This document shows positions 16,708 through 62,063 of a stretch of 64,000 bases of DNA, piece after piece; positions within the stretch are counted from its first letter, which is position 1, and every line of letters begins with the position of its first letter. The notes below the pieces were generated by a model. That model saw only the letters and a program-made list of their open reading frames with translations, did no database searches and was not told where the DNA came from. A program made the translations under genes and the position numbers. The stretch lies in the IMG/VR virus record IMGVR_UViG_3300049048_000052, positions 186,001-250,000 of that record; one strand, 5' to 3'.

Positions 16708-16716
16708 GAGAATGAC

Positions 16717-17246: not shown

Positions 17247-17258
17247 TGGAGGTACAAT

Positions 17259-35805: not shown

Positions 35806-38757
35806 TTAGGTTCCGTATGTAATAGAGGATAGTCTTCTAGCAAAGGGTATAACGGAGCTATCAGCAGTCTTGAAGTCTAATCTTATTGTTAGTTTCCTTC
35901 TGAGGGTACTTATGGAGGCCCCTGATGGGCTGATATTAGATATAGCATCTGATAAGGATAATGCCTTATAAGTATAACCATATAAGGGTATATTACCATC
36001 AAGTAGGAAGGTAGCAGCTGAATCCATGTCCATAGTCTCCCAGCTAATACCAGCATTAGAACTAAATAGAACATCGATAGACGTACCCTTTGGTATGTAT
36101 GCCTCAAAGGTAGTTTCTATATTATTATAGGCCGCCTCAAACTCTACAGTCTTACTGATCCAGGTAGAACTACGTCTATTAGCTATAGTGGTGAATGTAC
36201 TAGCATCTAGTTCTAATAAAGGAGACATTTGGTTAGTGTTGTTAAGTACAACCTTTAATTCAGAGGTGCTTGCAGGTTGTTGTAAGGTGTATTCATAGCC
36301 TCTAACCAAAGCCCAAGTACCATTCTCTTTAACGTAGGTTTGTATATTAGTACCAGCAGGTAATATAACAGGCATGTTAAATCTAACAGAGTTGTAGGGC
36401 TCTACATTCTCTATGTTAACTAATAGCTCAGACTTAGTATTAGCCATGACAGCCTTATTAAGTCTAAAGCTGAGATCCATATCATTATGAGGCTGCCAGC
36501 TACCCTCTTTCCTGGATAGGAGGATACCATTGAGTAGGGCTTGTGTAGTGGTTATTGTACCGTCAAGCAGCGAACGGGCCCCTATTGTAGAAACATATAA
36601 TTCTAGGCCAGGTAAGTTGGGACTAATAACTAATGCATATTGACCCCTGTTGCTTATAAAGGCAGGTTTGTCTAATACAACCTCTGTCCACTTACTACCG
36701 TTACTACTTAGTTGTATATCAGACAAACTTAAGTCTCCTATAGCTAGACATTCTGGAGTGGGTAGGCCACCATTAGCTGAGACTATAGATACCCTTGCTG
36801 CTATGATTGTGTTGTCCGTTTGTAGATTAGGAGCACTTCTTATCTTTAACCATATCGAGGTAATGCTAACAGGTTCCTCAATAAGGAATGTTTGGGCCCA
36901 ACCCTCAGTGCTTGATGCATAAGTAGTATTTAGAGGTAATACACCAGAGGCTGAATCTAGATCAGTTGTTATGGGCACTATGGCATCGTTTATAGATCTG
37001 TACACCGCTGAGGCAGTCGATCTAGGACCTGATAGTGTTACAACATAAGTATCAAGAGCTAGATTACTTGGTATGAAGAACTTAAGGAAAGCCATACCAT
37101 CAGCCCTAGCCTTTATGGAGTTAGTGGAAGAACCCGCCAAGGTGCCATTTAATAATGTGAACTGACTTATAGCTACATTACCAAAAGAGAGTGTAAGATT
37201 ATCCTCGTTAGGTTGGAAACCCGTACATTGGACGGTTATCTCCCTAACTAATAGGTTGAGGTTCAGGCTCACCCTACTATCATTATTAAGTGATAATGCT
37301 TTTAATATATTATCTTTAAGTGTTGGTAGAGATGATGGGGCCACCGCGCTATAAGGTATAGTAGCGGAGTCTGCTGGACCACTACTGGGACTTATATTCA
37401 TATGAGCTATAGTTCGGGTGTTGACTCCTAGGTTGACCCATGATGTACACTTAGCCTGTTCTATGTATGACTCTTCAGAGAATGAGCACATAGCGTAATT
37501 AGGTGTCCCATTACGGGCTACTATGTCTAAGGCAGTGGGAGTTAAGCCCACATTGACTATATCCTTAATACTAGTACTAAAGCCTGGCCTCAGTGCCCTA
37601 ATAGAGGGCATGAAGGAAGCATTGTAAAGAGGATGGTATGTATCGCTCCTGCTAAGGTCTATTAGAGCATCTGTAAATACGCCACTCAAATCAAATAGGT
37701 TATTATCTCCTATATCTAAAGCCTGCTTATCTAATAATAATTGGGTCATCTCCCTCTCATTACGATAGTTCTCCTCTGAGAGCAGTATAAGATCTGCATT
37801 AGTTAGGGATCTCTTCTTGGACAAAACAAGGGATATGTCCCTCTTGAATTGCCCTCCTATTAAAGTTCTATTAGTAATTTCTAGAGTAGCTAGATCTATA
37901 GTTGAGTGGGGTAAGCCGGGTACATATGTAGTAGGATCCTGCTCAGAATAATATTCTATAGTTCCTTGTTGGTTGAGCAGTATGATGTACCTAAATATTG
38001 TATTAGGTGTAGACGGAAAACTAGGTAAGTATAGGTAGGAGCCATAGGGTAAATAAACCCTGACTCCCTCTATATAAGCAACACCTGCATTAATTGTTAG
38101 CTTACGTGTTTCTTGATCCAGGCTAACCTCCATACCGTTAGCTATGAAGTCCCCGTTCTCTTCATACCAACGCTGACTAACCCTAGAGGATATAGCCTGG
38201 CCTATTATATTAGGGTCATATACCTTGGTAAGCTTACCGGGTCTATAGTGAAGTACATCCGGGGCCCCACCTGAAGGTCTATTATCAATTACTGCTATAG
38301 GATAACTATCCTCATTAAGAGTAAGTCTATATCTTACAACCAATCTATGAGCCCCGTAATCCCCCTTAATGAATAAGGGGTCTCTTAGAAGCTCAGAGTT
38401 ATCATCTATAAGAAAGTCTATCCTAAAGCCTAAGGATACTCTACCCTGTTTGGATACAGGTATCCGGTCGGCGGGTGCTATGTCTATGTAGAGGCCTCCG
38501 TGGGGAGTCTCTACATATATCTGACCCTGAGATAAGTGTAATATGTTGTACTTATCATTTATCTCAATGACACTAACCTTAAGGCCCCAAGTTGGAGAGT
38601 ATATACCGTAGACATAGGACGATAACCTTTGGTATTGGTAATTAAGTACAGATTGGAGTTCATGTAGCTCAGCTATTTGCAAAGGCCTATCAGGTCTGGC
38701 TAGCACCTTTACCCAACCAGACTCAGGGGTCCACCTATTAGAATATTTATTTTCCAT
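35806..38757 (-). CDS. DUF4815-like tail/baseplate protein, paralog of 38764..43182
   Basis: N-terminal RW....WVKVL..P...LQ.AE..E.Q; NAGVAYIEGVRV; FTDAL.D; AQTF; D.DLSF.LNKA; C-terminal WISKTV.F. Confidence 0.75.
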   Translation of the reverse strand: MENKYSNRWTPESGWVKVLARPDRPLQIAELHELQSVLNYQYQRLSSYVYGIYSPTWGLKVSVIEINDKYNILHLSQGQIYVETPHGGLYIDIAPADRIPVSKQGRVSLGFRIDFLIDDNSELLRDPLFIKGDYGAHRLVVRYRLTLNEDSYPIAVIDNRPSGGAPDVLHYRPGKLTKVYDPNIIGQAISSRVSQRWYEENGDFIANGMEVSLDQETRKLTINAGVAYIEGVRVYLPYGSYLYLPSFPSTPNTIFRYIILLNQQGTIEYYSEQDPTTYVPGLPHSTIDLATLEITNRTLIGGQFKRDISLVLSKKRSLTNADLILLSEENYRNEREMTQLLLDKQALDIGDNNLFDLSGVFTDALIDLSRSDTYHPLYNASFMPSIRALRPGFSTSIKDIVNVGLTPTALDIVARNGTPNYAMCSFSEESYIEQAKCTSWVNLGVNTRTIAHMNISPSSGPADSATIPYSAVAPSSLPTLKDNILKALSLNNDSRVSLNLNLLVREITVQCTGFQPNEDNLTLSFGNVAISQFTLLNGTLAGSSTNSIKARADGMAFLKFFIPSNLALDTYVVTLSGPRSTASAVYRSINDAIVPITTDLDSASGVLPLNTTYASSTEGWAQTFLIEEPVSITSIWLKIRSAPNLQTDNTIIAARVSIVSANGGLPTPECLAIGDLSLSDIQLSSNGSKWTEVVLDKPAFISNRGQYALVISPNLPGLELYVSTIGARSLLDGTITTTQALLNGILLSRKEGSWQPHNDMDLSFRLNKAVMANTKSELLVNIENVEPYNSVRFNMPVILPAGTNIQTYVKENGTWALVRGYEYTLQQPASTSELKVVLNNTNQMSPLLELDASTFTTIANRRSSTWISKTVEFEAAYNNIETTFEAYIPKGTSIDVLFSSNAGISWETMDMDSAATFLLDGNIPLYGYTYKALSLSDAISNISPSGASISTLRRKLTIRLDFKTADSSVIPFARRLSSITYGT

Positions 38758-38763: not shown

Positions 38764-41700
38764 TTAGTACACGTATGTCATAACGTTCTTTATAACAGCC
38801 TGCTTGGCTCTATCGGTGGTACTGATCTCTATCCTATACCTAAACTTCTTCCTGAGCTCAGTAAGTGCATAGATAGTAGATGGCTCTACCTTAAAGTATC
38901 TAGCCTCATATAGCTGAGTACCACTGTCCACAAGAGAGACGGAGGTGTTATCTAGGGTTAACTCATACCACTCCTGGCCTTCCCATGCAAAGCCGCTAGT
39001 AGGACTGTAGAATACCTTAATATTAGCTTCAACTGGTTTCACATATCTAACTATGACATCTATCTTTTTATAGGCATCCGGATAGGTGACCATCTTACTT
39101 ACTATTTGAGAGGCAGCATTAGCAGAATAAAAAGATATAGAGTTACCCTCTAGTGATATAGCAGGGCTAATAGTATCTGAGAATGTAGATAATGTAGCCC
39201 TAACTCTTAGAGAGTTCTTCTTAAAGGGTAAACATACTGTGACGTTAGGTTGGAATTTAACCCATACACTAGGAGTACTCTCGTATTCATAGGTAAGCTC
39301 TGTACCCTTTGGTACTATGTCTCTTGTATTGAGGCAGAAATAAGTTATATCAGTTACGGCATCTGATATGCCATAGGTACCTAAGTCTACAATTACAGGA
39401 CTAGTACTAAACTTAGCCCGGTCAATCTCATATGTAAGATCCTCCCGGTCTAATTCGCTAAGTATATTACCGTCCTTAGTTGTATATAGGGAGCCTTGTA
39501 GATACAGTTGGTCTCCTAAGGTTGAACCATTAATAAGATCTGGCTCTCCTAGTTGAGAAGTAAATATATTAAAGGATCCCGAGGTACTTTCTAGACCTAA
39601 CGAGTAGTTTTGGTTCCTATTTATAAGGATAGGCTTAGGAAACTGGAATGTAGTCTGTAGGGCAGAATTGGTACTGTATTGATACGTATCTGCTTGGGCC
39701 CTAGTGTAAGTTATCTTACCCGGCATATCATTAGCAGACCTTAGGTATACATTAAGATCTCCATCGGATGGACCTGACTTTAATCTTAGTTTAACCCCAG
39801 TAACATAGTAATTACCGAAGGATTCAAAGGTCTGATTAATAGGACTGAATCTAATAGGATACTCCTGAGCTTTCTCTAGCTGTAGGGTACTACTATTACC
39901 AATAGCCCCTGGATCTATATTAGATACGCCTAGCCTTAGGAGATCCTCACTAATATAGTCGTTATACTCTACGGGTAATGCAGAGTTACTGGTTACGCTT
40001 ATGGGTAAGGCGCCCCAACTCTTCATAGCACCTATAACTATCTGATTAAACAAATTGTTATATAGACTAATCCTAGACTTAGCATAGCCATCATTACCTA
40101 CCAGCTCTATAGCTAGAACTCCGGGGGCCAAGTCAGCAGGTAAGGTTATTCTAACTGTTATAGTTCCATCAGCTTTAGCCTTAATAGCCCCTGGGTATGC
40201 AAGACTACCCGGAGTATTATTCTGTAGGACAAAGGTAGTTACAGGCTTACCCGATATCATAATTCTATAATTATCAGAGCCCGGTATTAGGCCTTCTGCC
40301 ATAAGGATTAAGCCAATATTAGCCTCTATAGTAACCTGGGAGAATAAGGCAGCCAGGAAACTATTAGTTCTAGCATCTACGCTGTTAATAGCATCACCTG
40401 ATAATATAGAGTCGGAGGCCTTTTCAGCTGCCGAGGAGAAGAGACTATTAACTGAAGATACAATACTATCCACATAAGGAGAACGTGCTCCCTGTCTAAG
40501 TAATGTGCTTGTTATAGCCGTAAGGTAATCACAAGGTGTTAAACCCTTAAAGGTCTTATTATTAAATAATGTGGCACTGGAAATATATAACTTACCTCTC
40601 CTCTTAACACTATTGGAGTAAGGAGATAGCGCCATAGATCTAGTGGCCCTTGACTGAGAGATAAGGGGAACATTGGTATAGGGTAAGGTTACTACCGAAT
40701 TAATACCTGTCTCATTCTTTGATACTAATCCACCTGATGTATACCTAATAGGTACATCCTTATGAATATAACCCGCGCTAATAGACTGTATAGCAGGAAC
40801 TACAGAAGCACTCCAGAGAGTGGACGAAGTATCCAACTTAGATAAGTCTTGCACTGGTTCATTGAATAGGCCTATAGGGGCGCTACCTACCGCTAAACTA
40901 GATCTCCTATATGCTTCTAGGTCTAACTTGATTATCTCTAGATTCTGAGTGTTTTGCCGTACCCTGTCTGATAATACCTGTTGATCTTGGACTGTAAGTC
41001 TACGACACTTAAGAGGTGCAATAGTAATCCTATCTGCAAACATCTTAAAGGATGATACTGCTAATAGATTATCTGGTACTGAAGGTAGTAATGGGTCCTG
41101 ACTAGCCGCAGATAATATATAACCAAAGTTACCATCCTTGTCTAGAGTTATTACACCAGCCTTAGCTAGATAATAGGTATAGCTGACAGTAAATGTACCA
41201 TTATAAACATTAATGCCTTGGGCCGTCTGGGTATAGACTACTGCAGGCGTTCTACCAATAAAGATTATAGAGTCTGTACTGGAATCCAGGGTGAAATCAT
41301 CGTTTATTGCTAAGGGCTGGGTATATAAAAAGGACACATAATAGGTGGTGCCGGGGGCAGGTTCAACCCCTGACAGAGACCAATCAATCTTAGACTGATC
41401 TACTAAACGGAAGTCTATGCCCTCCGTATATGTAGTAGTACCTTGTATAACCTTGATGATTCTGAATATAGAATCATCTCCTAATAGATCTGTAGTACCA
41501 GGGGTGGTACCTCTGACTAGAGGTTTTAAGTCCTCCTGCATCTCAGCAACTAGGCTAAGTATTTCAGCAACGGGTCTAAATCCTAGTTGGAAGGCAGTTG
41601 TAGTGCCTCCGCCACCTAGATTAGCACTAGGGATATCAGATATGATACGGCCTGCACCGGAGGCTTGATTGCTACTGTTCCTCTTAATAGATTCTATCGA

Positions 41701-43182
41701 TACCCCTATCTGGTTAGCTCTTTCGTTTAAGGAAGTGCTGGTTATCTCTAATGAAGTACCAGAGGCCCCTGCCTTATTAATAACTAGATTGTTCTTTATA
41801 ATAGCTCTAACCTCTATAGAACTTAAGGCGCTATTAGGACTAATGTAAGTTATATAAGCGTTTAGAGTATTATCTACACTATTAACTTGTTGTTCTATAA
41901 ATAGTAGTAATGAGGGTATATCTGTTAGGGCAGTATTGGCAGCAGCACAACTAACCTCAATAGATGCGGTAATTGAATTACCTTGATATAGAAGATTAGT
42001 GAAGGTTACTCTTAGTAGAGTATTATCAGCAACTATATTAGCAAATGTGGATCCATCAGTTAACAGCAGTTGTCTAATAGCTTTAGCAGGGGTGCCTGCA
42101 TATGTAAACTTAACTGAGTCTACTGCGGTAGTAGGTAAGTCCTTAGGTACCGATATTATAGAGGGATCTGCTTTACATACCCGGAAGCCTTCAACGTATG
42201 CCACACCTGCGGTAATGCTAAAGAGTTCCTTATCTACTAATAGGTTGGATGCCTTATCAAGACTAGTACTGCTATTCTGGTATAAGGTCTGTTTAGTCAC
42301 TACGAGGTTAGCCAGACCATTATAGTCAGACTGTGCCTGAGCCACACGCTGTAGTAGATCGGCCCTAAGTGCTAGGTTACCACTAGTGGGACTGGCATTA
42401 GCTTGTAGATTAGACTGGTTTAATTGAGATTGTAGATTCTCTAGATTAGCCTTAGCTGCCTGAGCGTCTGATAGCGATTGTTGTAACTCTGAATTAGCAA
42501 TATCTACTGCATTCTGTAAGCTAGTGTATTTATTCTTATCGGCTACCGCCCTACTACTATTACCTACAGAAGTGGTCTCATAACCACTAACACAGAAATG
42601 TCCTGATCTTTCATATGTATACTGACTAAGAACTGTCTCAACCCTATAAAAAGGATTAAGTTGAGATTGGTTAACTACTCCATCAATAACCTTACCTATA
42701 GTAAAGGCATTGGGATCATCTATAAGAACAGAGGTAGTCCATATAAGTCTAGCTGCACCTGCTGGACCATACAATTCACCGCCTTTAAGTGGGTCTCTAA
42801 GAGAAGCATCCTCTTTCTCAGTTATGATGGACTCTTCTAGAAGTATTCCCACAGAGTAAGAACCTGATGTAGGTACAACAATATTAGTAGATGGTATATC
42901 AACTATTAAACCCTCTACATAAAACTGCCCTGCACTAATAGATATAGTTACTTCCTCTTCAGACCTAGCGCTAACCCCCATCCTCAAACCAGATATAGAG
43001 GTGCCATTTTTAAATAAGGTATTAAAACCCTGCTTAAGATTATCCTGAATTATGGTTTGTATCTCAGTCACCTCAGCAGTCTGCAGTGCTTGGCCTGGTA
43101 CAGGAAGTACCTTAACCCAGTTCTTGTTTCTCTTATACCTATCGGGATACAGGGGATCTCTAGAGTAGTCAAATAATGCCAT
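38764..43182 (-). CDS. DUF4815-like large tail/baseplate protein with an internal coiled coil
   Basis: Y.DRY...KNWVKVLPVPG.ALQTAE.TE.Q; AGVAYVEGFRV; NQTF; EDLTYEI.RAKF. Confidence 0.78.
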   Translation of the reverse strand: MALFDYSRDPLYPDRYKRNKNWVKVLPVPGQALQTAEVTEIQTIIQDNLKQGFNTLFKNGTSISGLRMGVSARSEEEVTISISAGQFYVEGLIVDIPSTNIVVPTSGSYSVGILLEESIITEKEDASLRDPLKGGELYGPAGAARLIWTTSVLIDDPNAFTIGKVIDGVVNQSQLNPFYRVETVLSQYTYERSGHFCVSGYETTSVGNSSRAVADKNKYTSLQNAVDIANSELQQSLSDAQAAKANLENLQSQLNQSNLQANASPTSGNLALRADLLQRVAQAQSDYNGLANLVVTKQTLYQNSSTSLDKASNLLVDKELFSITAGVAYVEGFRVCKADPSIISVPKDLPTTAVDSVKFTYAGTPAKAIRQLLLTDGSTFANIVADNTLLRVTFTNLLYQGNSITASIEVSCAAANTALTDIPSLLLFIEQQVNSVDNTLNAYITYISPNSALSSIEVRAIIKNNLVINKAGASGTSLEITSTSLNERANQIGVSIESIKRNSSNQASGAGRIISDIPSANLGGGGTTTAFQLGFRPVAEILSLVAEMQEDLKPLVRGTTPGTTDLLGDDSIFRIIKVIQGTTTYTEGIDFRLVDQSKIDWSLSGVEPAPGTTYYVSFLYTQPLAINDDFTLDSSTDSIIFIGRTPAVVYTQTAQGINVYNGTFTVSYTYYLAKAGVITLDKDGNFGYILSAASQDPLLPSVPDNLLAVSSFKMFADRITIAPLKCRRLTVQDQQVLSDRVRQNTQNLEIIKLDLEAYRRSSLAVGSAPIGLFNEPVQDLSKLDTSSTLWSASVVPAIQSISAGYIHKDVPIRYTSGGLVSKNETGINSVVTLPYTNVPLISQSRATRSMALSPYSNSVKRRGKLYISSATLFNNKTFKGLTPCDYLTAITSTLLRQGARSPYVDSIVSSVNSLFSSAAEKASDSILSGDAINSVDARTNSFLAALFSQVTIEANIGLILMAEGLIPGSDNYRIMISGKPVTTFVLQNNTPGSLAYPGAIKAKADGTITVRITLPADLAPGVLAIELVGNDGYAKSRISLYNNLFNQIVIGAMKSWGALPISVTSNSALPVEYNDYISEDLLRLGVSNIDPGAIGNSSTLQLEKAQEYPIRFSPINQTFESFGNYYVTGVKLRLKSGPSDGDLNVYLRSANDMPGKITYTRAQADTYQYSTNSALQTTFQFPKPILINRNQNYSLGLESTSGSFNIFTSQLGEPDLINGSTLGDQLYLQGSLYTTKDGNILSELDREDLTYEIDRAKFSTSPVIVDLGTYGISDAVTDITYFCLNTRDIVPKGTELTYEYESTPSVWVKFQPNVTVCLPFKKNSLRVRATLSTFSDTISPAISLEGNSISFYSANAASQIVSKMVTYPDAYKKIDVIVRYVKPVEANIKVFYSPTSGFAWEGQEWYELTLDNTSVSLVDSGTQLYEARYFKVEPSTIYALTELRKKFRYRIEISTTDRAKQAVIKNVMTYVY

Positions 43183-43192: not shown

Positions 43193-43744
43193 CTACAGTT
43201 TTATTATTGTTTGTATGGAGTGACTCTTGTTGGTAATTCTTGCTATAGGAGTACTATAAGCAACCCAATGGAGGAGGCCCGTGCTCTTAATCTCACTGGG
43301 TAGGTATTCCTGCTTATTAGTGGGTATACCTGAGTTAAACGTCACGTTGGTGTGTAGACCTGTAACCCTATAAGCAGGCTCTGTATAATCAGTACTTTTG
43401 ATTACAGTAGCTAAGTACAGGTGTGTAGGATATATCTCAAAGTACGTGCCGTCTATAAGCAAATCATCAAGATCATATAACCTATACCAAACATTATCAC
43501 ACAGTATATCCTTAGAGGTTGGACAATCTGTGATCCTAGCAGCCTTGAAGGTAAGAACTCTCTTAATTAGTATAGGTTCGGGTACTCCCCTTAGATCTAC
43601 TGGAGGTAGTGGTGGTTGTGTGTCATCGGGCCAGGCCGTTGGCTTTGCTATGGAGAAAAAGAAGTTATTATTGCCATTAACAAAGTCATATATTCTATGG
43701 GCCTTCCCTTGGAGGGTTATACTCTGGTTGATTATGTTAGTCAT
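43193..43744 (-). CDS. baseplate wedge protein (T4 gp8-like N-terminal motif)
   Basis: FFSIAKPTAWPDDTQPPLPP resembles the GR..PW.D...PP.P motif; baseplate context. Confidence 0.5.
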   Translation of the reverse strand: MTNIINQSITLQGKAHRIYDFVNGNNNFFFSIAKPTAWPDDTQPPLPPVDLRGVPEPILIKRVLTFKAARITDCPTSKDILCDNVWYRLYDLDDLLIDGTYFEIYPTHLYLATVIKSTDYTEPAYRVTGLHTNVTFNSGIPTNKQEYLPSEIKSTGLLHWVAYSTPIARITNKSHSIQTIIKL

Positions 43745-44853
43745 ACGTTAAGAATACTATCTATTATTTCTTTTGAGGTTAGGCCTGCGGATATAAAGGA
43801 GCCTTGTCTAGGGCCGTCATATGGTATAGCTAGAACACCTGTGACATGAATGTTAGGTATGGTTGTCCTGAAGCCTTGGCTAAGTTTAGGGAAGTTAGGC
43901 ATAAAGCTATAGGATTCTATAGGGTCCTTAGTAGGTATAAGCTTATAGTCTGGATCCAAGCCCGTCATGACTATTATATAGTCTATATCATCTAATACCT
44001 CTTGAAAGTCTGAGGTGTTATTACCTGTAAGACTAACTATATTAGATGAGACCCTCTGTAGTCTCCTATGTATGTAGGGAGTTATAGAGGGTTGCCATGC
44101 TTTAATATCCTGTAAGTATTTAAGTCTGAGGGGCCAATCCTGGATTCTTCTATAGAATCCACCAAGGCCTGTCTTAGGACCCCATTCTGTCCAGGTAGGT
44201 AAGGGGTAATTAGTTACCTTAGGATCGGCCTTAGTAATCCAGTAGACAGTGTTCTCATGGGCGAATCTCTCAGTTACCTCAGCGGCACCCTGTCCACTAC
44301 CTATTACACATATCCTCTTGTTAGTAGGAGACTCTGATAATAAGAAGCTAAGTTTAACCTCCTTCTGTTTCAGCTCTGTCTTAGCTATCCACTTGGGTAG
44401 TGTGCCAAGATTACAGCCTCCAAATGCTACGACGATGTTCTTGGCCTCTATTGTTTGGAATGTTGTCCTAATCTTATTACCATCAATAAGGTTGACCCTC
44501 TCTCTAATTAGGGCGGCCCCCTGTAAAGTTAACTGGAATATATGTTTAAGGTAACCCTCGAATGTTGCCCTATCTACTTTGGAACCTTGTGTCTCCACAG
44601 CATACTGACTAGCACTATAAGGCAGATTCAACTCCATATACTCGTTAAGTGAGTACTCATACATGTCAGGCAGATATGTAAATAGATCAAAGGTAGAAGG
44701 ACTCCTCATCTCAAGGTCTGGTATTATATTTGGGGCCCTCCAACTTGCCAGAGGCTGATCATCAATCATAACTACACTAAGCCCTCTCTCGATGGCATAC
44801 TTAGCTACTGATAATCCCCTGGGACCTACACCTAATACTGCTAGATCAAACAT
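43741..44853 (-). CDS. FAD/NAD(P)H-dependent monooxygenase, lysine N6/ornithine N5-hydroxylase (IucD/SidA/PvdA)-like
   Basis: FAD motif DLAVLGVGPRG, W.....P...MRSP, NADPH motif VIGSGQGAAE, IIVMTG, HVTG.LA....GP. Confidence 0.72.
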   Translation of the reverse strand: MFDLAVLGVGPRGLSVAKYAIERGLSVVMIDDQPLASWRAPNIIPDLEMRSPSTFDLFTYLPDMYEYSLNEYMELNLPYSASQYAVETQGSKVDRATFEGYLKHIFQLTLQGAALIRERVNLIDGNKIRTTFQTIEAKNIVVAFGGCNLGTLPKWIAKTELKQKEVKLSFLLSESPTNKRICVIGSGQGAAEVTERFAHENTVYWITKADPKVTNYPLPTWTEWGPKTGLGGFYRRIQDWPLRLKYLQDIKAWQPSITPYIHRRLQRVSSNIVSLTGNNTSDFQEVLDDIDYIIVMTGLDPDYKLIPTKDPIESYSFMPNFPKLSQGFRTTIPNIHVTGVLAIPYDGPRQGSFISAGLTSKEIIDSILNV

Positions 44854-44912: not shown

Positions 44913-44943
44913 AAAAAACAGTAGGACTTTCATCCTACTGTTT
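44913..44943 (-). terminator. rho-independent terminator after the large fibre gene
   Basis: On the - strand: AAACAGTAGGA-tgaaag-TCCTACTG followed by TTTTTT. Confidence 0.8.
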
Positions 44944-44961: not shown

Positions 44962-47900
44962 TTAGTATGTTGTTAAGGCATACTTAGATTTCAAGGATTG
45001 CTCTATAGCCGCTGCCTCAGGTAAGGTCAGGGCTGTGTCCATAACATAGAGAGCGGCAATGTCGGCGGCTAGGGCTGGGTTACCGTTACCATCACCACAT
45101 ATATGACATCTAGTCCTATTCATGTGCCTATAGTTATATAGGATACTATCGTTTGTAGTATTAGAGGTAACAGTAGTAACTCCATTTACCCTAATATAAC
45201 GTGCCATATCTGGGAAGTGACTAACGACGATAACGTTCCAGCTATCCTGCACTGTATTACCAGTAGACGCCTCGTCAAAGGCCATGCCGTTGAAGCCCAT
45301 AAGATATCTAGTAGCCCCGTTAGCCCCATTCTTAATAACGACGATGCCTTGGTTGTTATAGCTGGTTGTAAGGTTAAATAGAAGACCAGTTCCTACGTTG
45401 CCCTGTCTAATAACACAGATAAAAGTGAAACCTCTTTGGAAGTCCCTGAAATGTGTACCAGGTAAGTCTAATAGCTTACTACCATTGAAGGCCAAGTAGG
45501 GTAAACCGTTGGGACCTCCCGATGTCAGGATAGGTGCACTAGCCTCTGGTCTAGTAGCCGTAATACCTGCACCAGATATATCAGCCCAGGCGGTGACCGC
45601 ATTGCCTGCCCCTACAGTAGTACCTACATCAGATTCATAACCTGCTAATAGACCTGGAGTACCAAAGAGAGTTCTAGTAGCATGAGGATACTCCTGAATA
45701 CCTGTAACGTAACTATAAGTACCAGTTAAGGTCTTGCCTGCATCCGCAGCATTAAAGATAAAGGAACCATTAGACATATTAACTATGGCTTCGTTGGGAC
45801 CTGGTACAGAGTTAAAGGTACCATATAAGGTTGCCAGGGGATTGCCACCATAACCAGATAGACTCAGACTGTGGTTATAGGTTTGGTCATTATCCAAACC
45901 TACAAATCTAGTATCTGGGCTACCCCCAAACATGGACTTAGGTACGATCACCCTATAAGGTGCTGTATTGGGTACAGTAACGCTTATGGCTTGATCTATC
46001 TTAAGGGGTTTAGCGTAGAAGGCAAACTCATGGTTTAGAGTGTTACTAACATCCTTGAATATACCCCTACAGACGTACTGGGTGTAGTAGTTATTAGCTA
46101 CAAAGTGAGGTGAGGATGTACCTGTTGCCCAGGCTATTGTTAAACCAAATGGCATAGCATCTGTAGATGTATGAGTAGTCTTGGCCCCAATAGCAGGCTC
46201 CTGTAACCAGGTATTAGTAATAGTACTCCAAACCCAAGGTCTAATAACCCAGGCGCTGCCATTCCATTCATAGTAATCCCAACCTAATGGGTTATCTCTA
46301 ATAGTAGTACCGCTCGTACCATTGACCATATTGCTCTGATTGAATATATGGAATTGGTAGTTACCAAAGTGAGCTATACCTTTGCCCATGTAGACAAAGC
46401 GGTAGCCCATGTCTATAGCTCGGTGATCGGCTGCCACCTTAGTACCGTTAATATCCCATATAGAGGTTCTACCAATTAGACAGTTCTTCTCAAAGAAGAT
46501 TTGGTTATATGGGGCTGAGTATACGGTACTGTTCCCCAGAATCGTAAAAGCGTCTTGCTGAGTAGTACCCCATGCCATCTTAGCAAGAATATGATTACTA
46601 CCATTAAACAGTTGTATAGCCCAGAAGCTACCACTGTCAGATACGTTAAAGAAGTTGTTATGGTTTATCCAATTAAGCGTATTAACAGTTGAGGTATATA
46701 AGAAATGACCGGTGGTAGCACCTGCTGCCTGACTCCACCAAACAACTCTCCTATTACTGTTATAAGTATTAGCATTAGTGCTCTGATCCCACAAAGCAAT
46801 GCCAAGGCGATCATCCACATGCTCAGGATCAACCTTTAAGAGTACTGCACATGCCCAATTACTATCTGTTAGACCAGCATAAGTAATAGGTAAGGCAACA
46901 CTAAAGTCATCACTATTAGCTAGTCTACCCTCTAGAACAGCATACACTCTACCGTTTCTACCTACGTCAACCCCATAACAAGCATCAGTTGTCATTCTGG
47001 TAACTGTAGCAGCTAGAAATGTAGGATTGAGACCTCCGGTTAGAGAGATCTTCCACAAGCCAGTAGCCCTACAGCCAGCCCATATCTCACCATTGGCAGG
47101 ATTAACCTCCACTTGATTAAGGGCAGTAACAGGTAGTGCAGGGGTAGTGGTAGCATCTAGGGCTATATAAGCACCGGTCATTATATCTACGACGTTAAGA
47201 CCTGTTGCATCCCATTGGATGATAGTACTCTCATTAAATCTAATAGCCTTAAGGGAGCCCATACCATGTTCTTTAACACGTATAGCTCTGTCAGGGTGGA
47301 AGAAGGGGTTAGTAGTGATCCTATCAGCCCAGGTGTTTCCGTTCTGACCTAAGAAGTGCTTAACGTTGATCCTATAGGTGGCCGTACCTACATTACCCCC
47401 AGTTACAACATCTAGGTTGTATATCTGAGGATACTTACCAGTCCAGGTGCTAGTCGTACCTGTAACAGTAAAAATACCAGACCCAGTAGCTAGGTTTTGA
47501 TCATCCTGCATTGGTAGAGTGGCTGCGGCTGAGTGACTATACTTAGCCTGTACAACATTAGTATTGGGAGTAGCATTCTCCATAGACCAGGCAGTAGCCG
47601 ATTTTAGTATAGGACTAGCCTGTGTCCAGTTAAAGGCGGGATCCAGAATACCATAGGTTATACCATTAACTACACGACCTATCTCTTGAGTCGTGTTGAC
47701 TGTATAGGTATGCTTAACCTTATATAAGGCCCTCTTAACTCCAATAGTATAACCCCTAGGTGGGGTATAGGCAGTACCCCTATTTGCTACAAAGCCTGCC
47801 TCCTGATTAGTCTCAGTATAGTAATCTATGTAAGGGAAAGTAGTAGAATTCTTAGTGACAGGAGTAAAGCTTAAAAATCCAGGCAGGAAAGCACCTCTAG

Positions 47901-48528
47901 AGTTATCATCCGAATAGGAGATGTTGGGTGCGGTGAAACCCGCCACAGCTCTATAGCATTCAATAGCGGCCTTAGGACTTATTCTTACATGTTGGTCTAC
48001 ATCTACAAACTGTATTCTATAGAATATATCTATAATGTCAGAGGGCCCCTGAGTACAAGGGACATCTAATACTAACCAAGCACTAACTGCCACATCGTTA
48101 ATTGGGCTAGCATGTGCATTACTTGAGGGTAGGGATGTGGTAAGGCATACCGTATTAAATGATCTAGATGAACCTATAAAACTAATCCTGTTCTGTACCT
48201 GATAATAGGGAGGACTGACATCCTCTGTTAGGGTAGGAGATGTTACACCAGAGGCGACGAAGCCAGTGGCTATAATACCATCTATATACCATCTACCCAT
48301 ATTTGGGGTCTCAGACTGATTACCTATAGATATGAAATTACCTCTCAAATAGTTCCTATGAGGGTTAGGATTACCAAAGTTGTTACCACCCTCTAACAGA
48401 CCTATATAAAGCCAGTTACAGACTACGTTATCCTTCTTGATAACCTGCTTGACCTCACCAGTATTAGAATCTATAACTCTAATCTCGGCAGATCCTTTTA
48501 GTGTTGGTCCTTGAAATTGCATGTTCAT
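44962..48528 (-). CDS. tail fibre / receptor-binding protein (1188 aa) with a probable beta-propeller and a C-terminal LamG/concanavalin-like domain
   Basis: Propeller-like repeats (LNQVEVNP.NGEIWAG...GLWK; YGVDV..NGRVY); C-terminal AWADISG.G..AT...APIL...G.NG.P.LAFNG. Confidence 0.7.
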   Translation of the reverse strand: MNMQFQGPTLKGSAEIRVIDSNTGEVKQVIKKDNVVCNWLYIGLLEGGNNFGNPNPHRNYLRGNFISIGNQSETPNMGRWYIDGIIATGFVASGVTSPTLTEDVSPPYYQVQNRISFIGSSRSFNTVCLTTSLPSSNAHASPINDVAVSAWLVLDVPCTQGPSDIIDIFYRIQFVDVDQHVRISPKAAIECYRAVAGFTAPNISYSDDNSRGAFLPGFLSFTPVTKNSTTFPYIDYYTETNQEAGFVANRGTAYTPPRGYTIGVKRALYKVKHTYTVNTTQEIGRVVNGITYGILDPAFNWTQASPILKSATAWSMENATPNTNVVQAKYSHSAAATLPMQDDQNLATGSGIFTVTGTTSTWTGKYPQIYNLDVVTGGNVGTATYRINVKHFLGQNGNTWADRITTNPFFHPDRAIRVKEHGMGSLKAIRFNESTIIQWDATGLNVVDIMTGAYIALDATTTPALPVTALNQVEVNPANGEIWAGCRATGLWKISLTGGLNPTFLAATVTRMTTDACYGVDVGRNGRVYAVLEGRLANSDDFSVALPITYAGLTDSNWACAVLLKVDPEHVDDRLGIALWDQSTNANTYNSNRRVVWWSQAAGATTGHFLYTSTVNTLNWINHNNFFNVSDSGSFWAIQLFNGSNHILAKMAWGTTQQDAFTILGNSTVYSAPYNQIFFEKNCLIGRTSIWDINGTKVAADHRAIDMGYRFVYMGKGIAHFGNYQFHIFNQSNMVNGTSGTTIRDNPLGWDYYEWNGSAWVIRPWVWSTITNTWLQEPAIGAKTTHTSTDAMPFGLTIAWATGTSSPHFVANNYYTQYVCRGIFKDVSNTLNHEFAFYAKPLKIDQAISVTVPNTAPYRVIVPKSMFGGSPDTRFVGLDNDQTYNHSLSLSGYGGNPLATLYGTFNSVPGPNEAIVNMSNGSFIFNAADAGKTLTGTYSYVTGIQEYPHATRTLFGTPGLLAGYESDVGTTVGAGNAVTAWADISGAGITATRPEASAPILTSGGPNGLPYLAFNGSKLLDLPGTHFRDFQRGFTFICVIRQGNVGTGLLFNLTTSYNNQGIVVIKNGANGATRYLMGFNGMAFDEASTGNTVQDSWNVIVVSHFPDMARYIRVNGVTTVTSNTTNDSILYNYRHMNRTRCHICGDGNGNPALAADIAALYVMDTALTLPEAAAIEQSLKSKYALTTY

Positions 48529-48544
48529 GTTCCTTTTATAATGT

Positions 48545-49528
48545 TTAACCTAATACTAGACCACCTGAGTTCCAGGTATAAGGCGTGTTTGTCTTAGTAG
48601 TCTGGGTTAGAGAGTAACCAGGACTCAATGGGGCTGCCTCTGCAGTGGGCTCCAGATTAACCAGTAGGCTATAGAAGGGCAGAGGAGTATTTATAAGTAT
48701 AGTGGTATTAGCACTATAGGCTGGAGCTAAGACACCGGGATCTACATACTCTTGGTTAGTAAAGGCAGTGGAAAAGGTTAAGTTAGTTGGCGTTACTGTA
48801 GTACTAGCTAACCCGTAGCCTGGTGAGAGAGACCCACTATCATCCGCAATAGGTAGAGTAGGTATACTAGAGTAGTATAGAACATCTGAGTCTCTATGTC
48901 TTAATACTCCATTAGTTACATAGTTAAACCTAATCTTAAACCAGCTGGGTGCTTCATCTAATAGACCCCTAGGAACCGAGGCTGCAGGGAATGTCTCTAC
49001 AGGGTCATATGTTCCCGTGGTTGGGGACAGCTTAAGCCACGTACTACTATGCCAATATAGGGTATCAGCGGGTGCAGGCCAAGTTATTAGTGCGGTAGTC
49101 GCAACGTAAGCCTTGGATAAATATAAGGGGGCTGCGGCTGTTGTAGAGGTAACAGAGGTTTGTCTGTTATCAATTTCTATACTCCTAGTATTGCTGTAGG
49201 CTGGGCCTACATTTGCTGGAGATTGGGGTACCGTACTTATCTTTACATCAAACGTTGTATCAACTAGTGGTCCAGGTATTGTGGCCCTTACTACAATAGG
49301 ATTAATGTCTAGTACGTTATTTGCTAGACCACAGAAGGTAGGGGCTAAGGTATTCCCATTAGTAATAGTTAGCGGTCTACCACTTATTTGACTCCAAGTA
49401 ACGGGGGCATCAGGTGGACTACTGGCCATACCTGCAAACGTTAGACAATCAATACATATAACGTTGTAGGCCTCAGGACCTGTTATAGTGGCTAAGTTTA
49501 GAGCAGGAAAGAATAGAAATCTTCTCAT
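48545..49528 (-). CDS. virion protein with PKD/Ig-like domain
   Basis: VTWSQISG.PLTITN.NT.APTF is a PKD-like pattern; Thr/Pro-rich. Confidence 0.6.
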   Translation of the reverse strand: MRRFLFFPALNLATITGPEAYNVICIDCLTFAGMASSPPDAPVTWSQISGRPLTITNGNTLAPTFCGLANNVLDINPIVVRATIPGPLVDTTFDVKISTVPQSPANVGPAYSNTRSIEIDNRQTSVTSTTAAAPLYLSKAYVATTALITWPAPADTLYWHSSTWLKLSPTTGTYDPVETFPAASVPRGLLDEAPSWFKIRFNYVTNGVLRHRDSDVLYYSSIPTLPIADDSGSLSPGYGLASTTVTPTNLTFSTAFTNQEYVDPGVLAPAYSANTTILINTPLPFYSLLVNLEPTAEAAPLSPGYSLTQTTKTNTPYTWNSGGLVLG

Positions 49529-50133
49529 TACTTTGTTACCCTCAGTGTGAATGCTAAATTAGAGGGTGTTACTACACTAATCACTTCAAGTTCTACTAAA
49601 CTATTAATTGTCACAGCACCGCTATTTGCTGTAAATGTGGTAACACTAGTACTAGCAGAGACTGCGGTAATACCACTAACGGCTACCCCATTAACCTTAA
49701 GGGTTACTACAGCAGAGCCTGCCGTTAACCTAAGGGCTAATGAATTAATAGTATAAGCAAAGGCAGCACTTACATCTAATATATATGACTTAACTACAGG
49801 AGTCTCTATATGACCCGTCAAGGCATCCATATTAGCCGTAGGTATATATTTACCTAAGGTACCGTTATAACGGAGTACATCTCCATTAACAGGGGGATTA
49901 CTATCAACAGGCACACCCTGTATACCTGAGACAATAGGTAAGTTGGCAGTACCTGATAGATCCTTAGTAAGTCTAAGTCTACCCTTAACTAGAGATGAGG
50001 CATCCACTAGTATCTGGGATACAGTTATCTTCTCATTAGTAGGAGTGCTATTAGCGGACCTAACTAAGGGTAGTAAGTCCTCGTCCGCTACGGCAGTGGC
50101 TGCTAATAATTCAGTTATCTTCTTACCAGCCAT
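49528..50133 (-). CDS. short tail-fibre-like protein, paralog of 50136..50795
   Basis: KKITELLAAT...D.L.LV N-terminus; DASSLVKGRLRLTKDLSGTA..P; shared C-terminal domain. Confidence 0.7.
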   Translation of the reverse strand: MAGKKITELLAATAVADEDLLPLVRSANSTPTNEKITVSQILVDASSLVKGRLRLTKDLSGTANLPIVSGIQGVPVDSNPPVNGDVLRYNGTLGKYIPTANMDALTGHIETPVVKSYILDVSAAFAYTINSLALRLTAGSAVVTLKVNGVAVSGITAVSASTSVTTFTANSGAVTINSLVELEVISVVTPSNLAFTLRVTK

Positions 50134-50135
50134 TC

Positions 50136-50795
50136 TTAACCTACCCTGCTAATCTCTATTGTAAATGAGAGGTCTGTTACTGTACCTGATGGCACAACCT
50201 GCATAGATACGGTAGCCCCGATAGGAACTAATATACCCTGAGGGGCTACGGTTCTCTGTGAACCAGTATTAGCCGTCAGGTTACTTAAGCCTGATACAGG
50301 ATTACCATCTACTCTAAGAGTAACCGATGCAGTACCACTTACGGTCTGCATAGTTATACCCTCTAGGTAGTAAGCATATACGGCCCTCTGCTCTAAAATG
50401 TATGCTTTATTAAGTGGCAGCTCTATCTGCCCACTAATACTGTCTATAGGTTCAAACTTAGCAACCCTTACCCAGTTGGATGTGTCTGAGTAGTATATAG
50501 CACCAGTCTGACTAACATATGCTAATTGAATGTCTGAGGGAGCGGGAGGTAGGGATGCTACGGTTGTGTATATAGGTATAACAAGGGCGCCCCCATCGGA
50601 ACCCCCAGTGCCGTTGCTAATACTAACAATACGTCCTTTAGCATCAACGGTTACATTAGCATTGTTGTAAAGACCTGCTACGACCCCAGTACTAGATAGT
50701 TGGGGAGATTCAGCAGTTCCCGCTAAGTCCCCTGTGAGTCTGATCTTACCCTTAATAGTCTGGGTAGCATCAGGTGTATATAAATTAAGTCCCAT
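50136..50795 (-). CDS. short tail-fibre-like protein, paralog of 49528..50133
   Basis: DATQTIKGKIRLTGDLAGTA..P; AG.YNNANVTVDAKGRIVSISNG repeat; shared C-terminal domain. Confidence 0.7.
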   Translation of the reverse strand: MGLNLYTPDATQTIKGKIRLTGDLAGTAESPQLSSTGVVAGLYNNANVTVDAKGRIVSISNGTGGSDGGALVIPIYTTVASLPPAPSDIQLAYVSQTGAIYYSDTSNWVRVAKFEPIDSISGQIELPLNKAYILEQRAVYAYYLEGITMQTVSGTASVTLRVDGNPVSGLSNLTANTGSQRTVAPQGILVPIGATVSMQVVPSGTVTDLSFTIEISRVG

Positions 50796-54350: not shown

Positions 54351-54772
54351 AGACTTAATGTGGTAACAATAGTTTGGACGGGTTGTCCTAGTAGGGAATA
54401 CTCAACCTTAACGTCAATAGTATCGAAGCTGACAACGTTAACTCTTACTGACTCAAGATTAATCTCAGAGGACACAAAGGATATAGCACTCTCTATATCC
54501 TGTTTAATCTGGGAGACAAGATTAACTGTAAGGCCCTCAGATAGACGACTATATATAGCATCCCCAAAACCCCCATCCAGATTAGATATACCATTAGTAT
54601 CTATAACATAGCGACCTATATAACCTAAGGGCGTCTCAACGGCCCTTCTTACTAAGTGTCTAATGGCAGTCACTTCATCCTCTACCTCTATGTCATAGTA
54701 GGTAATACTATCGTCGGCGCCATCAAACTCTCTAATAGAAAAGTCCTGATTTACTAGTTTTATGTCTATCAT
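54347..54772 (-). CDS. gp25/W-like baseplate wedge protein
   Basis: AI...V.R...TPLG....FG..I...L.E; I...I........V.V....I.V.VEY; directly upstream of J. Confidence 0.7.
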   Translation of the reverse strand: MIDIKLVNQDFSIREFDGADDSITYYDIEVEDEVTAIRHLVRRAVETPLGYIGRYVIDTNGISNLDGGFGDAIYSRLSEGLTVNLVSQIKQDIESAISFVSSEINLESVRVNVVSFDTIDVKVEYSLLGQPVQTIVTTLSL

Positions 54773-61609: not shown

Positions 61610-62063
61610 CCTCTACTCCTAAATCTATTTGTTTAGTACGGGTAAATCTGTTTAGATATCTGTATAACTTAGACTTATCAAAGTTAATGGGGTCCTCATA
61701 ATAACCAGTAGTATCTATCTCTGTATGAGTGGTAATACGATCATCCTCTATACCCGTCGCAGCTACAACCATAGCTAAACTCATATATTGCTCCTCTGTG
61801 TACCCCTGATGAGGATCCAACACCTCTGGTGACTCTAATGCAATCTGATATGCGAAGTCGTCTACTGAGTTGTTAATGGACTCTCCATTAAATTCAGTAT
61901 TAGCAGCGGCAAATGCTTTCATATTGGAGGCCACCCCATAAAGGATAATACCATCCCTGGTTATCAGGACATGGTAACTGACGCCGGAGGATGCAGATTG
62001 TAACTCCCTTAGGGCCTGTTGTATTGGTACCCCAGTCTCATGTATAACTACTATTGGTTTCAT
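61602..62063 (-). CDS. N-acetylmuramoyl-L-alanine amidase (Amidase_2), cyanobacterial style
   Basis: VVIHET, VSYH.LI.RDG, S..DFAY.I.LES, GYT..QY.SLA, RITTH, EDP..FD; Zn ligands intact. Confidence 0.88.
   Translation of the reverse strand: MKPIVVIHETGVPIQQALRELQSASSGVSYHVLITRDGIILYGVASNMKAFAAANTEFNGESINNSVDDFAYQIALESPEVLDPHQGYTEEQYMSLAMVVAATGIEDDRITTHTEIDTTGYYEDPINFDKSKLYRYLNRFTRTKQIDLGVEDV

What the first reader, a model, noticed from the sequence alone, without database searches (positions are those of the whole stretch)
43741..44853. Siderophore-type lysine/ornithine N-hydroxylase embedded in the tail/baseplate operon
Seen: an intact two-dinucleotide flavoprotein monooxygenase placed after the fibre-gene terminator and coupled by an ATGA overlap to a baseplate wedge gene. 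Known: IucD/PvdA/SidA enzymes make N-hydroxy-Lys/Orn for hydroxamate siderophores; cyanobacteria import hydroxamates through TonB-dependent receptors; iron-carrying phage tails have been proposed (the Ferrojan horse hypothesis). Inferred: the enzyme may hydroxylate virion lysines or a small amine to create an iron-binding, siderophore-mimicking adsorption device, or act as a redox assembly factor. No acyltransferase partner is visible in the window, which weakens the siderophore reading.
Basis: partly seen in the sequence, partly recalled or inferred. Interest (0 to 1): 0.7.

Follow-up and report, generated by a model that had tools for sequence, protein, structure and literature searches.

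The report
Flavoprotein gene fixed in cyanophage baseplate
An intact flavin-enzyme gene that looks like a siderophore hydroxylase holds the same slot in the baseplate genes of a whole lineage of cyanobacterial viruses, and some relatives keep it after losing both cofactor sites, so its lasting job is probably in building or decorating the tail rather than making siderophores.

Summary
Window 43741..44853 (-) is an intact 370-aa ORF with both dinucleotide-binding motifs. A terminator-like hairpin lies upstream, and an ATGA overlap joins it to the next gene.

The fold is that of a class B flavoprotein monooxygenase, and siderophore N-hydroxylases are the best structural matches. It is not a member of the IucD/PvdA/SidA clade, for four reasons:
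- It forms its own virus-only clade.
- It lacks the N-hydroxylase signature residues and is shorter at the C-terminus.
- Its nearest cellular relatives are uncharacterised ~380-aa flavoproteins.
- The 251-kb phage genome has no IucA/C or IucB partner.

It is not a moron. In about 30 related loci, down to 28% identity, it lies immediately upstream of the BW3TFN connector gene (T4 gp8 / A511 gp105 type), between the BW3-position gene and the DUF4815 "tripod" fibre genes. Staphylococcal Kayvirus phages have the same module without it.

A derived subclade lost both cofactor motifs but kept the gene, its size, its fold and its slot.

My best reading is a domesticated flavoprotein that serves as an accessory subunit or assembly factor of the baseplate arm. 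The window's copy probably still binds FAD and NAD(P)H. The function is untested, and the siderophore/iron reading is unsupported.

The parts
43741..44853 (-). Flavoprotein gene, 370 aa (P0001). Class B flavoprotein monooxygenase fold; member of PHROG 29209 / Ma-LMM01 gp106 family.
44812..44847 (-). Codons 3-14: first beta-strand plus the FAD-type GxGPRG motif (G8, G10, P11, R12 invariant in the 53-sequence alignment).
44275..44313 (-). Codons 181-193: NAD(P)H-type motif V-I-G-S-G-Q-G-A-A-E (G185, Q188, E192 invariant).
43789..43818 (-). Codons 346-355: family signature D-G-P-R-Q-x-S-x-I-S. It corresponds to HGPAQRF in the nearest cellular group. It is the one signature motif largely retained in the cofactor-less subclade.
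44916..44943 (-). Terminator-like hairpin with a T-run, between the 1188-aa gene and the flavoprotein gene.
   Evidence: It is a consensus match only, and the count in the region equals the chance expectation.
43193..43744 (-). BW3TFN connector gene, 183 aa (T4 gp8 / A511 gp105 type; Kayvirus 'tail fiber proximal part'). Its start overlaps the flavoprotein stop (ATGA).
   Evidence: E 5e-9 to the Kayvirus protein.
38764..43182 (-). DUF4815 protein, 1472 aa, homologous to the Herelleviridae 'tail fiber tripod receptor-binding protein' / TmpG.
35806..38757 (-). Second DUF4815 protein, 983 aa.
44962..50795 (-). Variable insert of four genes (219 and 201 aa with DUF5907 repeats, 327 aa, 1188 aa orphan) between the BW3-position gene and the flavoprotein. 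This interval is 0-4 kb in relatives.
50809..53292 (-). 827-aa protein in the BW3 ('tail fibre scaffold') position. The assignment rests on gene order only.
   Evidence: conserved in relatives; no significant similarity to the Kayvirus scaffold.
53292..54350 (-). Baseplate_J / BW2 wedge protein, 352 aa.
54347..54772 (-). gp25-like protein, 141 aa (weak, sub-threshold Pfam match); BW1 / sheath-initiator position.
   Evidence: E 2e-4, below the curated cut-off.

Best explanation
The gene encodes a class B flavoprotein (N-hydroxylase-like fold) that an ancestor of a cyanophage lineage (Ma-LMM01-like Microcystis phages, a Microcoleus phage, proviruses in Calothrix and Elainella) captured long ago. 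Since then it has been a fixed part of a Herelleviridae-type baseplate 'arm' module with the order BW2 - BW3 - [flavoprotein] - BW3TFN connector - DUF4815 tripod.

Shown:
- The fold, and the intact FAD and NAD(P)H motifs in this copy.
- An invariant gene slot with tight coupling to the BW3TFN gene.
- A separate virus-only clade.
- No siderophore partner genes in the genome.
- Derived relatives that lost both cofactor motifs yet keep the gene, its size, its fold and its slot.

Inferred:
- The role common to the whole family is non-catalytic. The protein is made together with the connector and fibre-network proteins, and it acts as an accessory subunit of the baseplate periphery or as an assembly scaffold for the arm.
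- In most lineages, this window included, it still binds FAD and NAD(P)H. That binding either stabilises the fold or provides an additional redox activity of unknown substrate in the infected cell, where NADPH and O2 are available.

It is not a siderophore-pathway enzyme.
For: Fold: the AF2 model has pLDDT 96. The best PDB matches are DfoA, PvdA, DesB, SidA and KtzI at TM 0.72-0.76 and about 15% identity; IucD is the top Swiss-Prot match.

Motifs: 105 of 117 family members keep both GxGxx[GA] motifs. The invariant residues include G8, G10, P11, R12, D31, R50, S51, P52, G185, Q188 and E192.

Synteny: the order BW2 - BW3-position - (0-4 kb variable) - flavoprotein - BW3TFN - DUF4815 - DUF4815 holds in Ma-LMM01, My-WqHQDG, Calothrix and about 25 IMG/VR loci, down to 28% identity. 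The flavoprotein-BW3TFN junction overlaps or has a gap of 14 nt or less in 19 of the 21 loci read; one has a 63-nt gap, and one has an apparent 43-nt overlap that may come from a mis-called start (coordinates).

Pseudoenzyme subclade: P0092 and P0094-P0098 have both motifs degenerate. They are full-length, nest inside the phage clade and keep the fold in a model built from degenerate sequences only (pLDDT 83). In 4 of 4 informative contigs they lie directly upstream of BW3TFN.

Module identity: the DUF4815 protein matches the Herelleviridae tripod RBP/TmpG. BW3TFN matches the Kayvirus 'tail fiber proximal part' at E 5e-9. In that Kayvirus the connector gene follows the scaffold gene directly, with nothing between them.

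Against a siderophore role.

Composition: GC of the gene (0.41) equals its flanks.
Against: There is no direct evidence that the protein is in virions or that it binds any baseplate protein. I found no virion proteome or baseplate structure for this lineage. The one complex prediction gave no verdict.

About 90% of family members, this one included, keep both cofactor motifs and the active-site R-S-P motif over deep divergence. That argues that cofactor binding, and perhaps catalysis, matters in most lineages; the cofactor-less subclade may be an exception and not the rule.

Gene position alone cannot separate a structural subunit from a non-virion assembly factor or a modifying enzyme. The BW3 assignment of the 827-aa neighbour rests on position only.
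Confidence: 0.5

Rival explanations
1. It is first of all an active monooxygenase. During assembly in the NADPH- and O2-rich cyanobacterial cytoplasm it oxygenates a nucleophile (amine or thiol) on a tail-fibre-network protein, or on a small ligand the tail needs. It sits in the operon so that it is made in step with its substrate.
For: Both dinucleotide motifs and the R50-S51-P52 loop are conserved in about 90% of members. The nearest cellular flavoproteins, presumably active, share the R-S motif. The subclade that lost the cofactor motifs also lost this loop. The gene is tightly coupled to the structural genes.
Against: Cofactor-less descendants keep the gene in the same slot, so a non-catalytic function must exist. 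No candidate substrate residue co-varies with motif state: the Ma-LMM01 connector has no Cys although its flavoprotein is intact, while connectors next to degenerate copies keep their Cys. Protein-lysine N-hydroxylation has no precedent that I know of (own knowledge).
Confidence: 0.25
2. One reading: a siderophore-type Lys/Orn (or diamine) N-hydroxylase makes hydroxamate or iron-binding groups on the virion or on a small amine, giving a siderophore-mimicking ('Ferrojan horse') adsorption device.
For: The best structural matches are siderophore N-hydroxylases. The profile-profile match to an IucD-type alignment has E 1e-27 over residues 4-270.
Against: The family lies outside the IucD-type clade. 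It lacks the N-hydroxylase Gln, Lys, Asn and WHPG signatures and the C-terminal third does not align. It is closer to non-siderophore cellular flavoproteins. A hydroxamate needs an acyltransferase, and neither that nor an IucA/C synthetase is present in the 251-kb genome. Cofactor-less relatives keep the slot. The PF13434 model is unspecific, firing in 12 of 14 control genomes.
Confidence: 0.04
3. It is a free-standing auxiliary metabolic gene or moron that only happens to lie in the tail operon.
For: A terminator-like hairpin precedes it. The interval upstream of it is variable among relatives.
Against: The gene always lies directly before the BW3TFN gene in all loci, down to 28% identity. 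Its composition matches its flanks. The family is found almost only in this phage module: 93 hits among 1.84 billion representatives and 3 of 185,579 species genomes.
Confidence: 0.05

Closest known systems
SidA / IucD / PvdA / DfoA N-hydroxylating flavoprotein monooxygenases (class B)
   Same: The three-dimensional fold (TM 0.72-0.76). FAD and NADPH Rossmann motifs, including G-x-G-Q-x-A-A-E. The shared motifs D-L-V-T, R-x-x-F-x-x-Y-L and a T-G motif. Significant profile-profile homology over the first 270 residues.
   Different: About 15% identity and 55-100 residues shorter, and the C-terminal third does not align. The N-hydroxylase invariants Asn (GPxNL), WH(PG), Gln and Lys (LQxSFLKDL) are Gly13, W-x, Arg50 and Phe55 here. 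It forms a separate clade. It has no siderophore gene neighbours or partners. It is encoded in a baseplate module.
Ma-LMM01 gp106 / MaMV-DC homologue / PHROG 29209 (annotated 'putative lysine/ornithine N-monooxygenase', function unknown)
   Same: The same family (E 6e-60 to the PHROG; about 36% identity to gp106) and the same gene slot before the 'virion structural protein' gp107, which is BW3TFN. It is the only close structural match among viral models.
   Different: The window's protein is 370 aa against 337 aa and comes from a 251-kb soil-metagenome phage. Four extra genes lie between the BW3-position gene and the flavoprotein.
Uncharacterised ~370-400-aa cellular flavoproteins (P0100, P0107-P0109, P0115 and others; Pyr_redox_3 / ArsO-like at sub-threshold scores)
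   Same: The best full-length profile match (E 3e-41, residues 2-371). Shared motifs are GAGP-x-G, L/M-R-S, G-S-G-Q-S-A-A-E, T-I-T-P and H/D-G-P-x-Q.
   Different: They are cellular stand-alone genes in unrelated contexts. They form a separate clade and their function is also unknown.
Herelleviridae baseplate arm (Kayvirus 'tail fiber scaffold' - 'proximal part' - 'tripod RBP'; A511 gp104-gp105-gp106)
   Same: The same gene order, with homologous BW3TFN and DUF4815/tripod proteins. The role of BW3TFN as a connector between BW3 and the fibre network is described in PMC10811340.
   Different: The Kayvirus locus examined has no gene between the scaffold (BW3) and the connector. The flavoprotein is therefore an addition specific to the cyanophage lineage.
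Flavo- or nucleotide-enzyme folds reported as virion parts: mimivirus GMC-type oxidoreductases in fibrils and the genomic fibre; the old, contested reports of dihydrofolate reductase in the T4 baseplate (both from my own knowledge, not checked here)
   Same: The idea of an oxidoreductase fold, with or without its cofactor, serving as a building block of a virus particle.
   Different: The folds and viruses are unrelated. For the present protein, presence in the virion has not been shown.

Membership tests
SidA/IucD/PvdA N-hydroxylating monooxygenases | Two Rossmann dinucleotide-binding motifs (FAD GxGxxG; NADPH GxGxxA followed by AE) | tested here: met
   G8-V-G10-P-R-G13 and G185-S-G187-Q-G-A190-A-E192.
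SidA/IucD/PvdA N-hydroxylating monooxygenases | Three-dimensional fold of the family | tested here: met
   Foldseek top matches are DfoA, PvdA, DesB, SidA and KtzI at TM 0.72-0.76; IucD is the top Swiss-Prot match. CzcO/FMO-type class B enzymes score nearly as well (TM 0.68-0.73).
SidA/IucD/PvdA N-hydroxylating monooxygenases | Signature residues: Asn of GPxNL, WHPG, and Gln and Lys of LQxSFLKDL (flavin- and substrate-facing) | tested here: not met
   Invariant N16, W42-H43 and Q54 of the IucD-type alignment align to G13, W38-x and R50; the Lys aligns to the invariant F55.
SidA/IucD/PvdA N-hydroxylating monooxygenases | Full-length match, including the C-terminal third | tested here: not met
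   The PF13434 match covers profile positions 2-214 of 339. hhalign aligns only residues 4-270. The protein is 370 aa against 414-450 aa for the three named N-hydroxylases in alignment A3 and 425-462 aa for its four library members.
SidA/IucD/PvdA N-hydroxylating monooxygenases | Phylogenetic placement inside the clade | tested here: not met
   Quick ML tree: the IucD-type clade (support 100) and the phage clade (support 99) are separate. The tree is a quick search and is unrooted.
SidA/IucD/PvdA N-hydroxylating monooxygenases | Genomic partnership with siderophore assembly genes (IucA/C synthetase, IucB-type acyltransferase, NRPS) | tested here: not met
   No PF04183 or PF13523 match in the 251,780-bp genome. 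The neighbours are baseplate genes in all loci.
SidA/IucD/PvdA N-hydroxylating monooxygenases | NADPH- and O2-dependent N-hydroxylation of Lys, Orn or a diamine | not testable with these tools
   Needs an enzyme assay.
PHROG 29209 / Ma-LMM01 gp106 family | Full-length sequence match to the family profile | tested here: met
   E 6.2e-60, residues 5-368 against profile positions 4-331 of 337; tblastn to Ma-LMM01, MaMV and My-WqHQDG at 35-36% identity and 98% coverage.
PHROG 29209 / Ma-LMM01 gp106 family | Gene slot immediately upstream of the BW3TFN connector gene in the baseplate module | tested here: met
Virion baseplate structural proteins (Herelleviridae-type arm) | Encoded inside the BW2-BW3-BW3TFN-tripod gene block | tested here: met
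Virion baseplate structural proteins (Herelleviridae-type arm) | Counterpart in the gene block of a phage type whose baseplate has been solved | tested here: not met
   The Kayvirus locus has no gene between the scaffold and the connector. No phage structural protein appears among the PDB sequence or fold matches.
Virion baseplate structural proteins (Herelleviridae-type arm) | Physical presence in purified virions, or binding to a baseplate protein | not testable with these tools
   I found no proteome or structure for this lineage. The complex prediction gave no verdict.

The most novel reading that the evidence does not exclude
The flavoprotein is a true subunit of the baseplate periphery, and its bound flavin and NAD(P)H site makes the tail a redox- or light-responsive device. 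This would be a cofactor-gated switch controlling fibre deployment or adsorption in viruses of oxygenic phototrophs, where light-dependent adsorption has long been reported but not explained (own knowledge). The cofactor-less subclade would be lineages that gave up the gating but kept the subunit.
Probability: 0.06. Interest if true: 0.9.

Novelty: new variant of a known kind. Interest (0 to 1): 0.55.

Why it matters
Phage baseplates are known to carry hydrolases that work without cofactors. A conserved FAD/NAD(P)H-type enzyme fold wired into the baseplate arm genes is unusual.

The data here replace an 18-year-old database label ('putative lysine/ornithine N-monooxygenase' in Ma-LMM01) with a sharper, testable picture:
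- A virus-only clade of class B flavoproteins.
- A fixed slot between the arm scaffold and its connector.
- Natural pseudoenzyme variants that separate a non-catalytic role from cofactor chemistry.

Ma-LMM01 and the MaMV phages are cultured, so the question can be answered directly: is a flavoprotein part of a virus tail, and what does the flavin do there? The result also removes support for an attractive but unsupported siderophore-mimicry story.

Tried and rejected
- **Complex prediction.** Flavoprotein plus BW3TFN connector gave no verdict (score 0.00). It is evidence neither for nor against binding.
- **Disulfide-forming (FMO-type thiol oxidase) idea.** I looked for Cys in the connector that co-varies with the cofactor-motif state and found none. 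The family has no invariant Cys. The idea was dropped as unsupported.
- **Fusion ('Rosetta stone') search.** The longer hits P0101 and P0106 are ordinary flavoproteins with no baseplate domain.
- **Transcript evidence.** Only one DNA run, from a soil metagenome, holds the region, and no RNA run does.
- **Literature.** I found no virion proteome or baseplate structure for Ma-LMM01-like phages. The original Ma-LMM01 genome paper is not in the library.
- **Source names of homologues.** They gave no host information.
- **Kayvirus scaffold.** BLASTP of the 827-aa neighbour against it was not significant, so its BW3 label rests on position.
- **Tree.** The careful maximum-likelihood search did not finish in time, so only the quick tree is reported.
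Full report
**1. Observation**

The ORF at 43741..44853 on the minus strand is intact: 370 aa, ATG start, kept as P0001. It carries an N-terminal G-x-G-P-R-G motif (residues 8-13) and a second G-S-G-Q-G-A-A-E motif (residues 185-192).

Its TGA overlaps the ATG of the next gene, 43193..43744 on the minus strand. The plus strand reads 'tcat' at 43741-43744, which is ATGA on the coding strand.

A hairpin with a 12-bp stem and a T-run lies at 44943..44916 on the minus strand, between the upstream 1188-aa gene and the flavoprotein start. Sites of this kind are no more frequent in the region than in shuffled sequence, so the hairpin is suggestive only.

The window is bases 186001-250000 of a 251,780-bp virus record. 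The only sequencing run that holds the region is a soil-metagenome DNA run.

**2. What the protein is**

- **Pfam.** PF13434 (Lys_Orn_oxgnase) matches at E 6e-14, but only for residues 1-204 against profile positions 2-214 of 339. The same model fires above its cut-off in 12 of 14 control genomes, including organisms with no hydroxamate siderophores. The Pfam name is therefore not diagnostic.
- **Structure.** An AlphaFold2 model from a 53-sequence alignment is very confident, with pLDDT 96 and pTM 0.93. Its best PDB neighbours are the siderophore N-hydroxylases DfoA, PvdA, DesB, SidA, KtzI and putrescine N-hydroxylase, at TM 0.72-0.76 by query and 14-17% identity. FMO-type class B enzymes follow. 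In Swiss-Prot models IucD is first and CzcO-type oxidoreductases are close behind. The fold-level description 'class B two-dinucleotide flavoprotein monooxygenase, nearest to N-hydroxylases' is sound.

**3. Not a member of the IucD/PvdA/SidA clade**

- **Library searches.** An exhaustive HMMER search of 1.84 billion representatives returned only 93 proteins at E <= 0.001. About 50 of these form a tight ~370-aa family (E < 1e-30). Ordinary N-hydroxylases of 425-468 aa appear only near E 1e-5.
- **Profile against N-hydroxylases.** I built a reference alignment from a plasmid IucD, two annotated family members and four library hits. The profile-profile comparison gives E 1.3e-27 but covers only residues 4-270.
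- **Profile against cellular flavoproteins.** The comparison with a group of uncharacterised ~370-400-aa cellular flavoproteins gives E 3.4e-41 over the full length. Those cellular genes lie in unrelated, non-siderophore contexts.
- **Signature residues.** In the alignment to N-hydroxylases, their invariant Asn (GPxNL), the His of the WHPG motif, and the Gln and Lys of LQxSFLKDL correspond to Gly13, a variable position after Trp38, Arg50 and Phe55.
- **Tree.** A quick maximum-likelihood tree puts all phage sequences in one clade (SH-aLRT 99), apart from the IucD-type clade (100) and the cellular groups. The careful search did not finish and the tree is unrooted.
- **Partner genes.** The whole phage genome has no IucA/IucC synthetase and no IucB-type acyltransferase.

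**4. Genomic setting**

The downstream 183-aa gene is a PF25691 'baseplate wedge 3 - tail fibre network connector' (BW3TFN) at E 1.8e-17. This fold is described for T4 gp8 and A511 gp105 as the link between the BW3 wedge protein and the receptor-binding fibre network (PMC10811340).

Next come two DUF4815 proteins of 1472 and 983 aa. The first is homologous to the Herelleviridae 'tail fiber tripod receptor-binding protein' / TmpG.

Upstream lie, in order:
- a gp25-like protein (a weak match),
- Baseplate_J (BW2),
- an 827-aa protein in the BW3 position,
- four variable genes, two of them with DUF5907 repeats.

In a Kayvirus the annotated order is sheath initiator - wedge - 'tail fiber scaffold' - 'tail fiber proximal part' - 'tripod RBP'. 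The window's connector matches that 'proximal part' at E 5e-9. The Kayvirus has nothing between scaffold and connector. The flavoprotein is therefore an addition to an otherwise recognisable baseplate arm module.

**5. The position is fixed**

The same order appears in:
- Ma-LMM01 (gp106 before gp107) and the Microcoleus phage My-WqHQDG,
- a Calothrix provirus and another NCBI contig,
- 27 IMG/VR loci, analysed together by BLASTP of all ORFs against the window's tail proteins.

The order is always BW2 - BW3-position - (0-4 kb variable) - flavoprotein - BW3TFN - DUF4815 - DUF4815, down to 28% identity of the flavoprotein.

The flavoprotein and connector genes overlap or lie within 14 nt in 19 of the 21 loci I read. 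One locus has a 63-nt gap, and one has an apparent 43-nt overlap that may reflect a mis-called start.

The gene's GC content equals that of its flanks. Only 3 of 185,579 species genomes carry the family; one is the cyanobacterium Elainella saxicola and the other two are metagenome bins. Among predicted viral structures only the MaMV-DC homologue matches.

**6. Natural pseudoenzymes**

Among the more distant family members, six representative clusters (P0092 and P0094-P0098) have both dinucleotide motifs degenerate. Examples are G-x-N-P-H-S in place of G-x-G-P-R-G, and G-S/T-x-E/D in place of G-S-G-Q. The M-R-S-P loop is also changed. They keep full length and, in most of them, motifs such as W-G-x-K-S-A, W-Q-P-S-I and D-G-x-R-Q.

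By a simple motif test, 105 of 117 family sequences keep both motifs and 6 have lost both.

In the tree these sequences nest inside the phage clade as derived branches, implying one or two losses. A model built only from the seven degenerate or partly degenerate sequences (P0102 included) still gives the same fold (pLDDT 83; best matches DesB, putrescine N-hydroxylase and KtzI at TM 0.66-0.70).

In all four contigs long enough to tell, the gene again sits directly before a BW3TFN gene. Where the contig is long enough it also follows a large BW3-position gene and precedes DUF4815.

The family therefore has a function that needs neither FAD nor NAD(P)H and that is tied to this slot.

**7. Interpretation**

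The role common to the family is most simply a non-catalytic one in the baseplate arm. That means an accessory subunit of the baseplate periphery, or a scaffold or chaperone for assembling BW3, the connector and the tripod.

The window's copy, like about 90% of the family, keeps both cofactor motifs and the R-S-P loop shared with the cellular relatives. It very probably still binds FAD and NAD(P)H and may have an added redox activity in the infected cell.

I could not identify a substrate. A check for cysteines in the connector that co-vary with motif state was negative. I could not show binding either: the single complex prediction gave no verdict. I found no virion proteome or baseplate structure for this lineage.

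My probabilities are:

| Reading | Probability |
|---|---|
| Baseplate-arm accessory subunit or assembly role | about 0.5 |
| Catalysis-first modifying enzyme | about 0.25 |
| Incidental metabolic gene | about 0.05 |
| Siderophore/iron device | about 0.04 |
| Cofactor-gated (light or redox) baseplate switch | about 0.06 |

The remainder is unassigned.

**8. Novelty and verdict**

The gene family has carried a homology-based label in Ma-LMM01 since its genome was published, and PHROGs lists it as of unknown function. Its presence in a phage is therefore not new.

I found none of the following in the papers I could search:
- its exact place in a Herelleviridae-type arm module,
- its separation from true siderophore hydroxylases,
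- the existence of cofactor-less descendants in the same slot.

I rate it a new variant of a known kind and moderately interesting (0.55). The question is directly testable in cultured Microcystis phages.

Noticed in passing
window 18303..27188 (-): A giant 2961-aa ORF at the end of the tail block. Its only family match is a staphylococcal-nuclease (SNase) domain near the N-terminus, residues 58-152.
   Followed up: partly
window 62073..63788 (-): A 571-aa protein that combines a PHROG 'baseplate protein' N-terminal part with a C-terminal GDSL esterase/lipase domain. It is a likely tail-borne esterase.
   Followed up: partly
window 60473..62063 (-): An M23 metallopeptidase (378 aa) and an Amidase_2 N-acetylmuramoyl-L-alanine amidase (153 aa) lie inside the tail module, upstream of the baseplate genes.
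   Followed up: partly
window 44962..48528 (-): A 1188-aa orphan just upstream of the hairpin, with no Pfam, PHROG or PDB sequence match. It belongs to a variable cassette between the BW3-position gene and the flavoprotein. That cassette is 0-4 kb in relatives and often holds DUF5907-repeat proteins.
   Followed up: partly
L004 / L024 (Calothrix sp. FACHB-1219 contig, also an IMG/VR provirus) and L048 (Elainella saxicola): The same baseplate block, including the flavoprotein, occurs inside cyanobacterial genome assemblies. This suggests temperate relatives or phage-tail-like elements in filamentous cyanobacteria.
   Followed up: no
P0060, P0063 (family members): Two related members have G-S-A-Q in place of G-S-G-Q in the NAD(P)H motif while the FAD motif is intact. 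They may be intermediates in the loss of the cofactor site.
   Followed up: no
window 99..18306 (+): A block of about 27 plus-strand ORFs lies opposite in orientation to the tail module. I did not annotate it.
   Followed up: no
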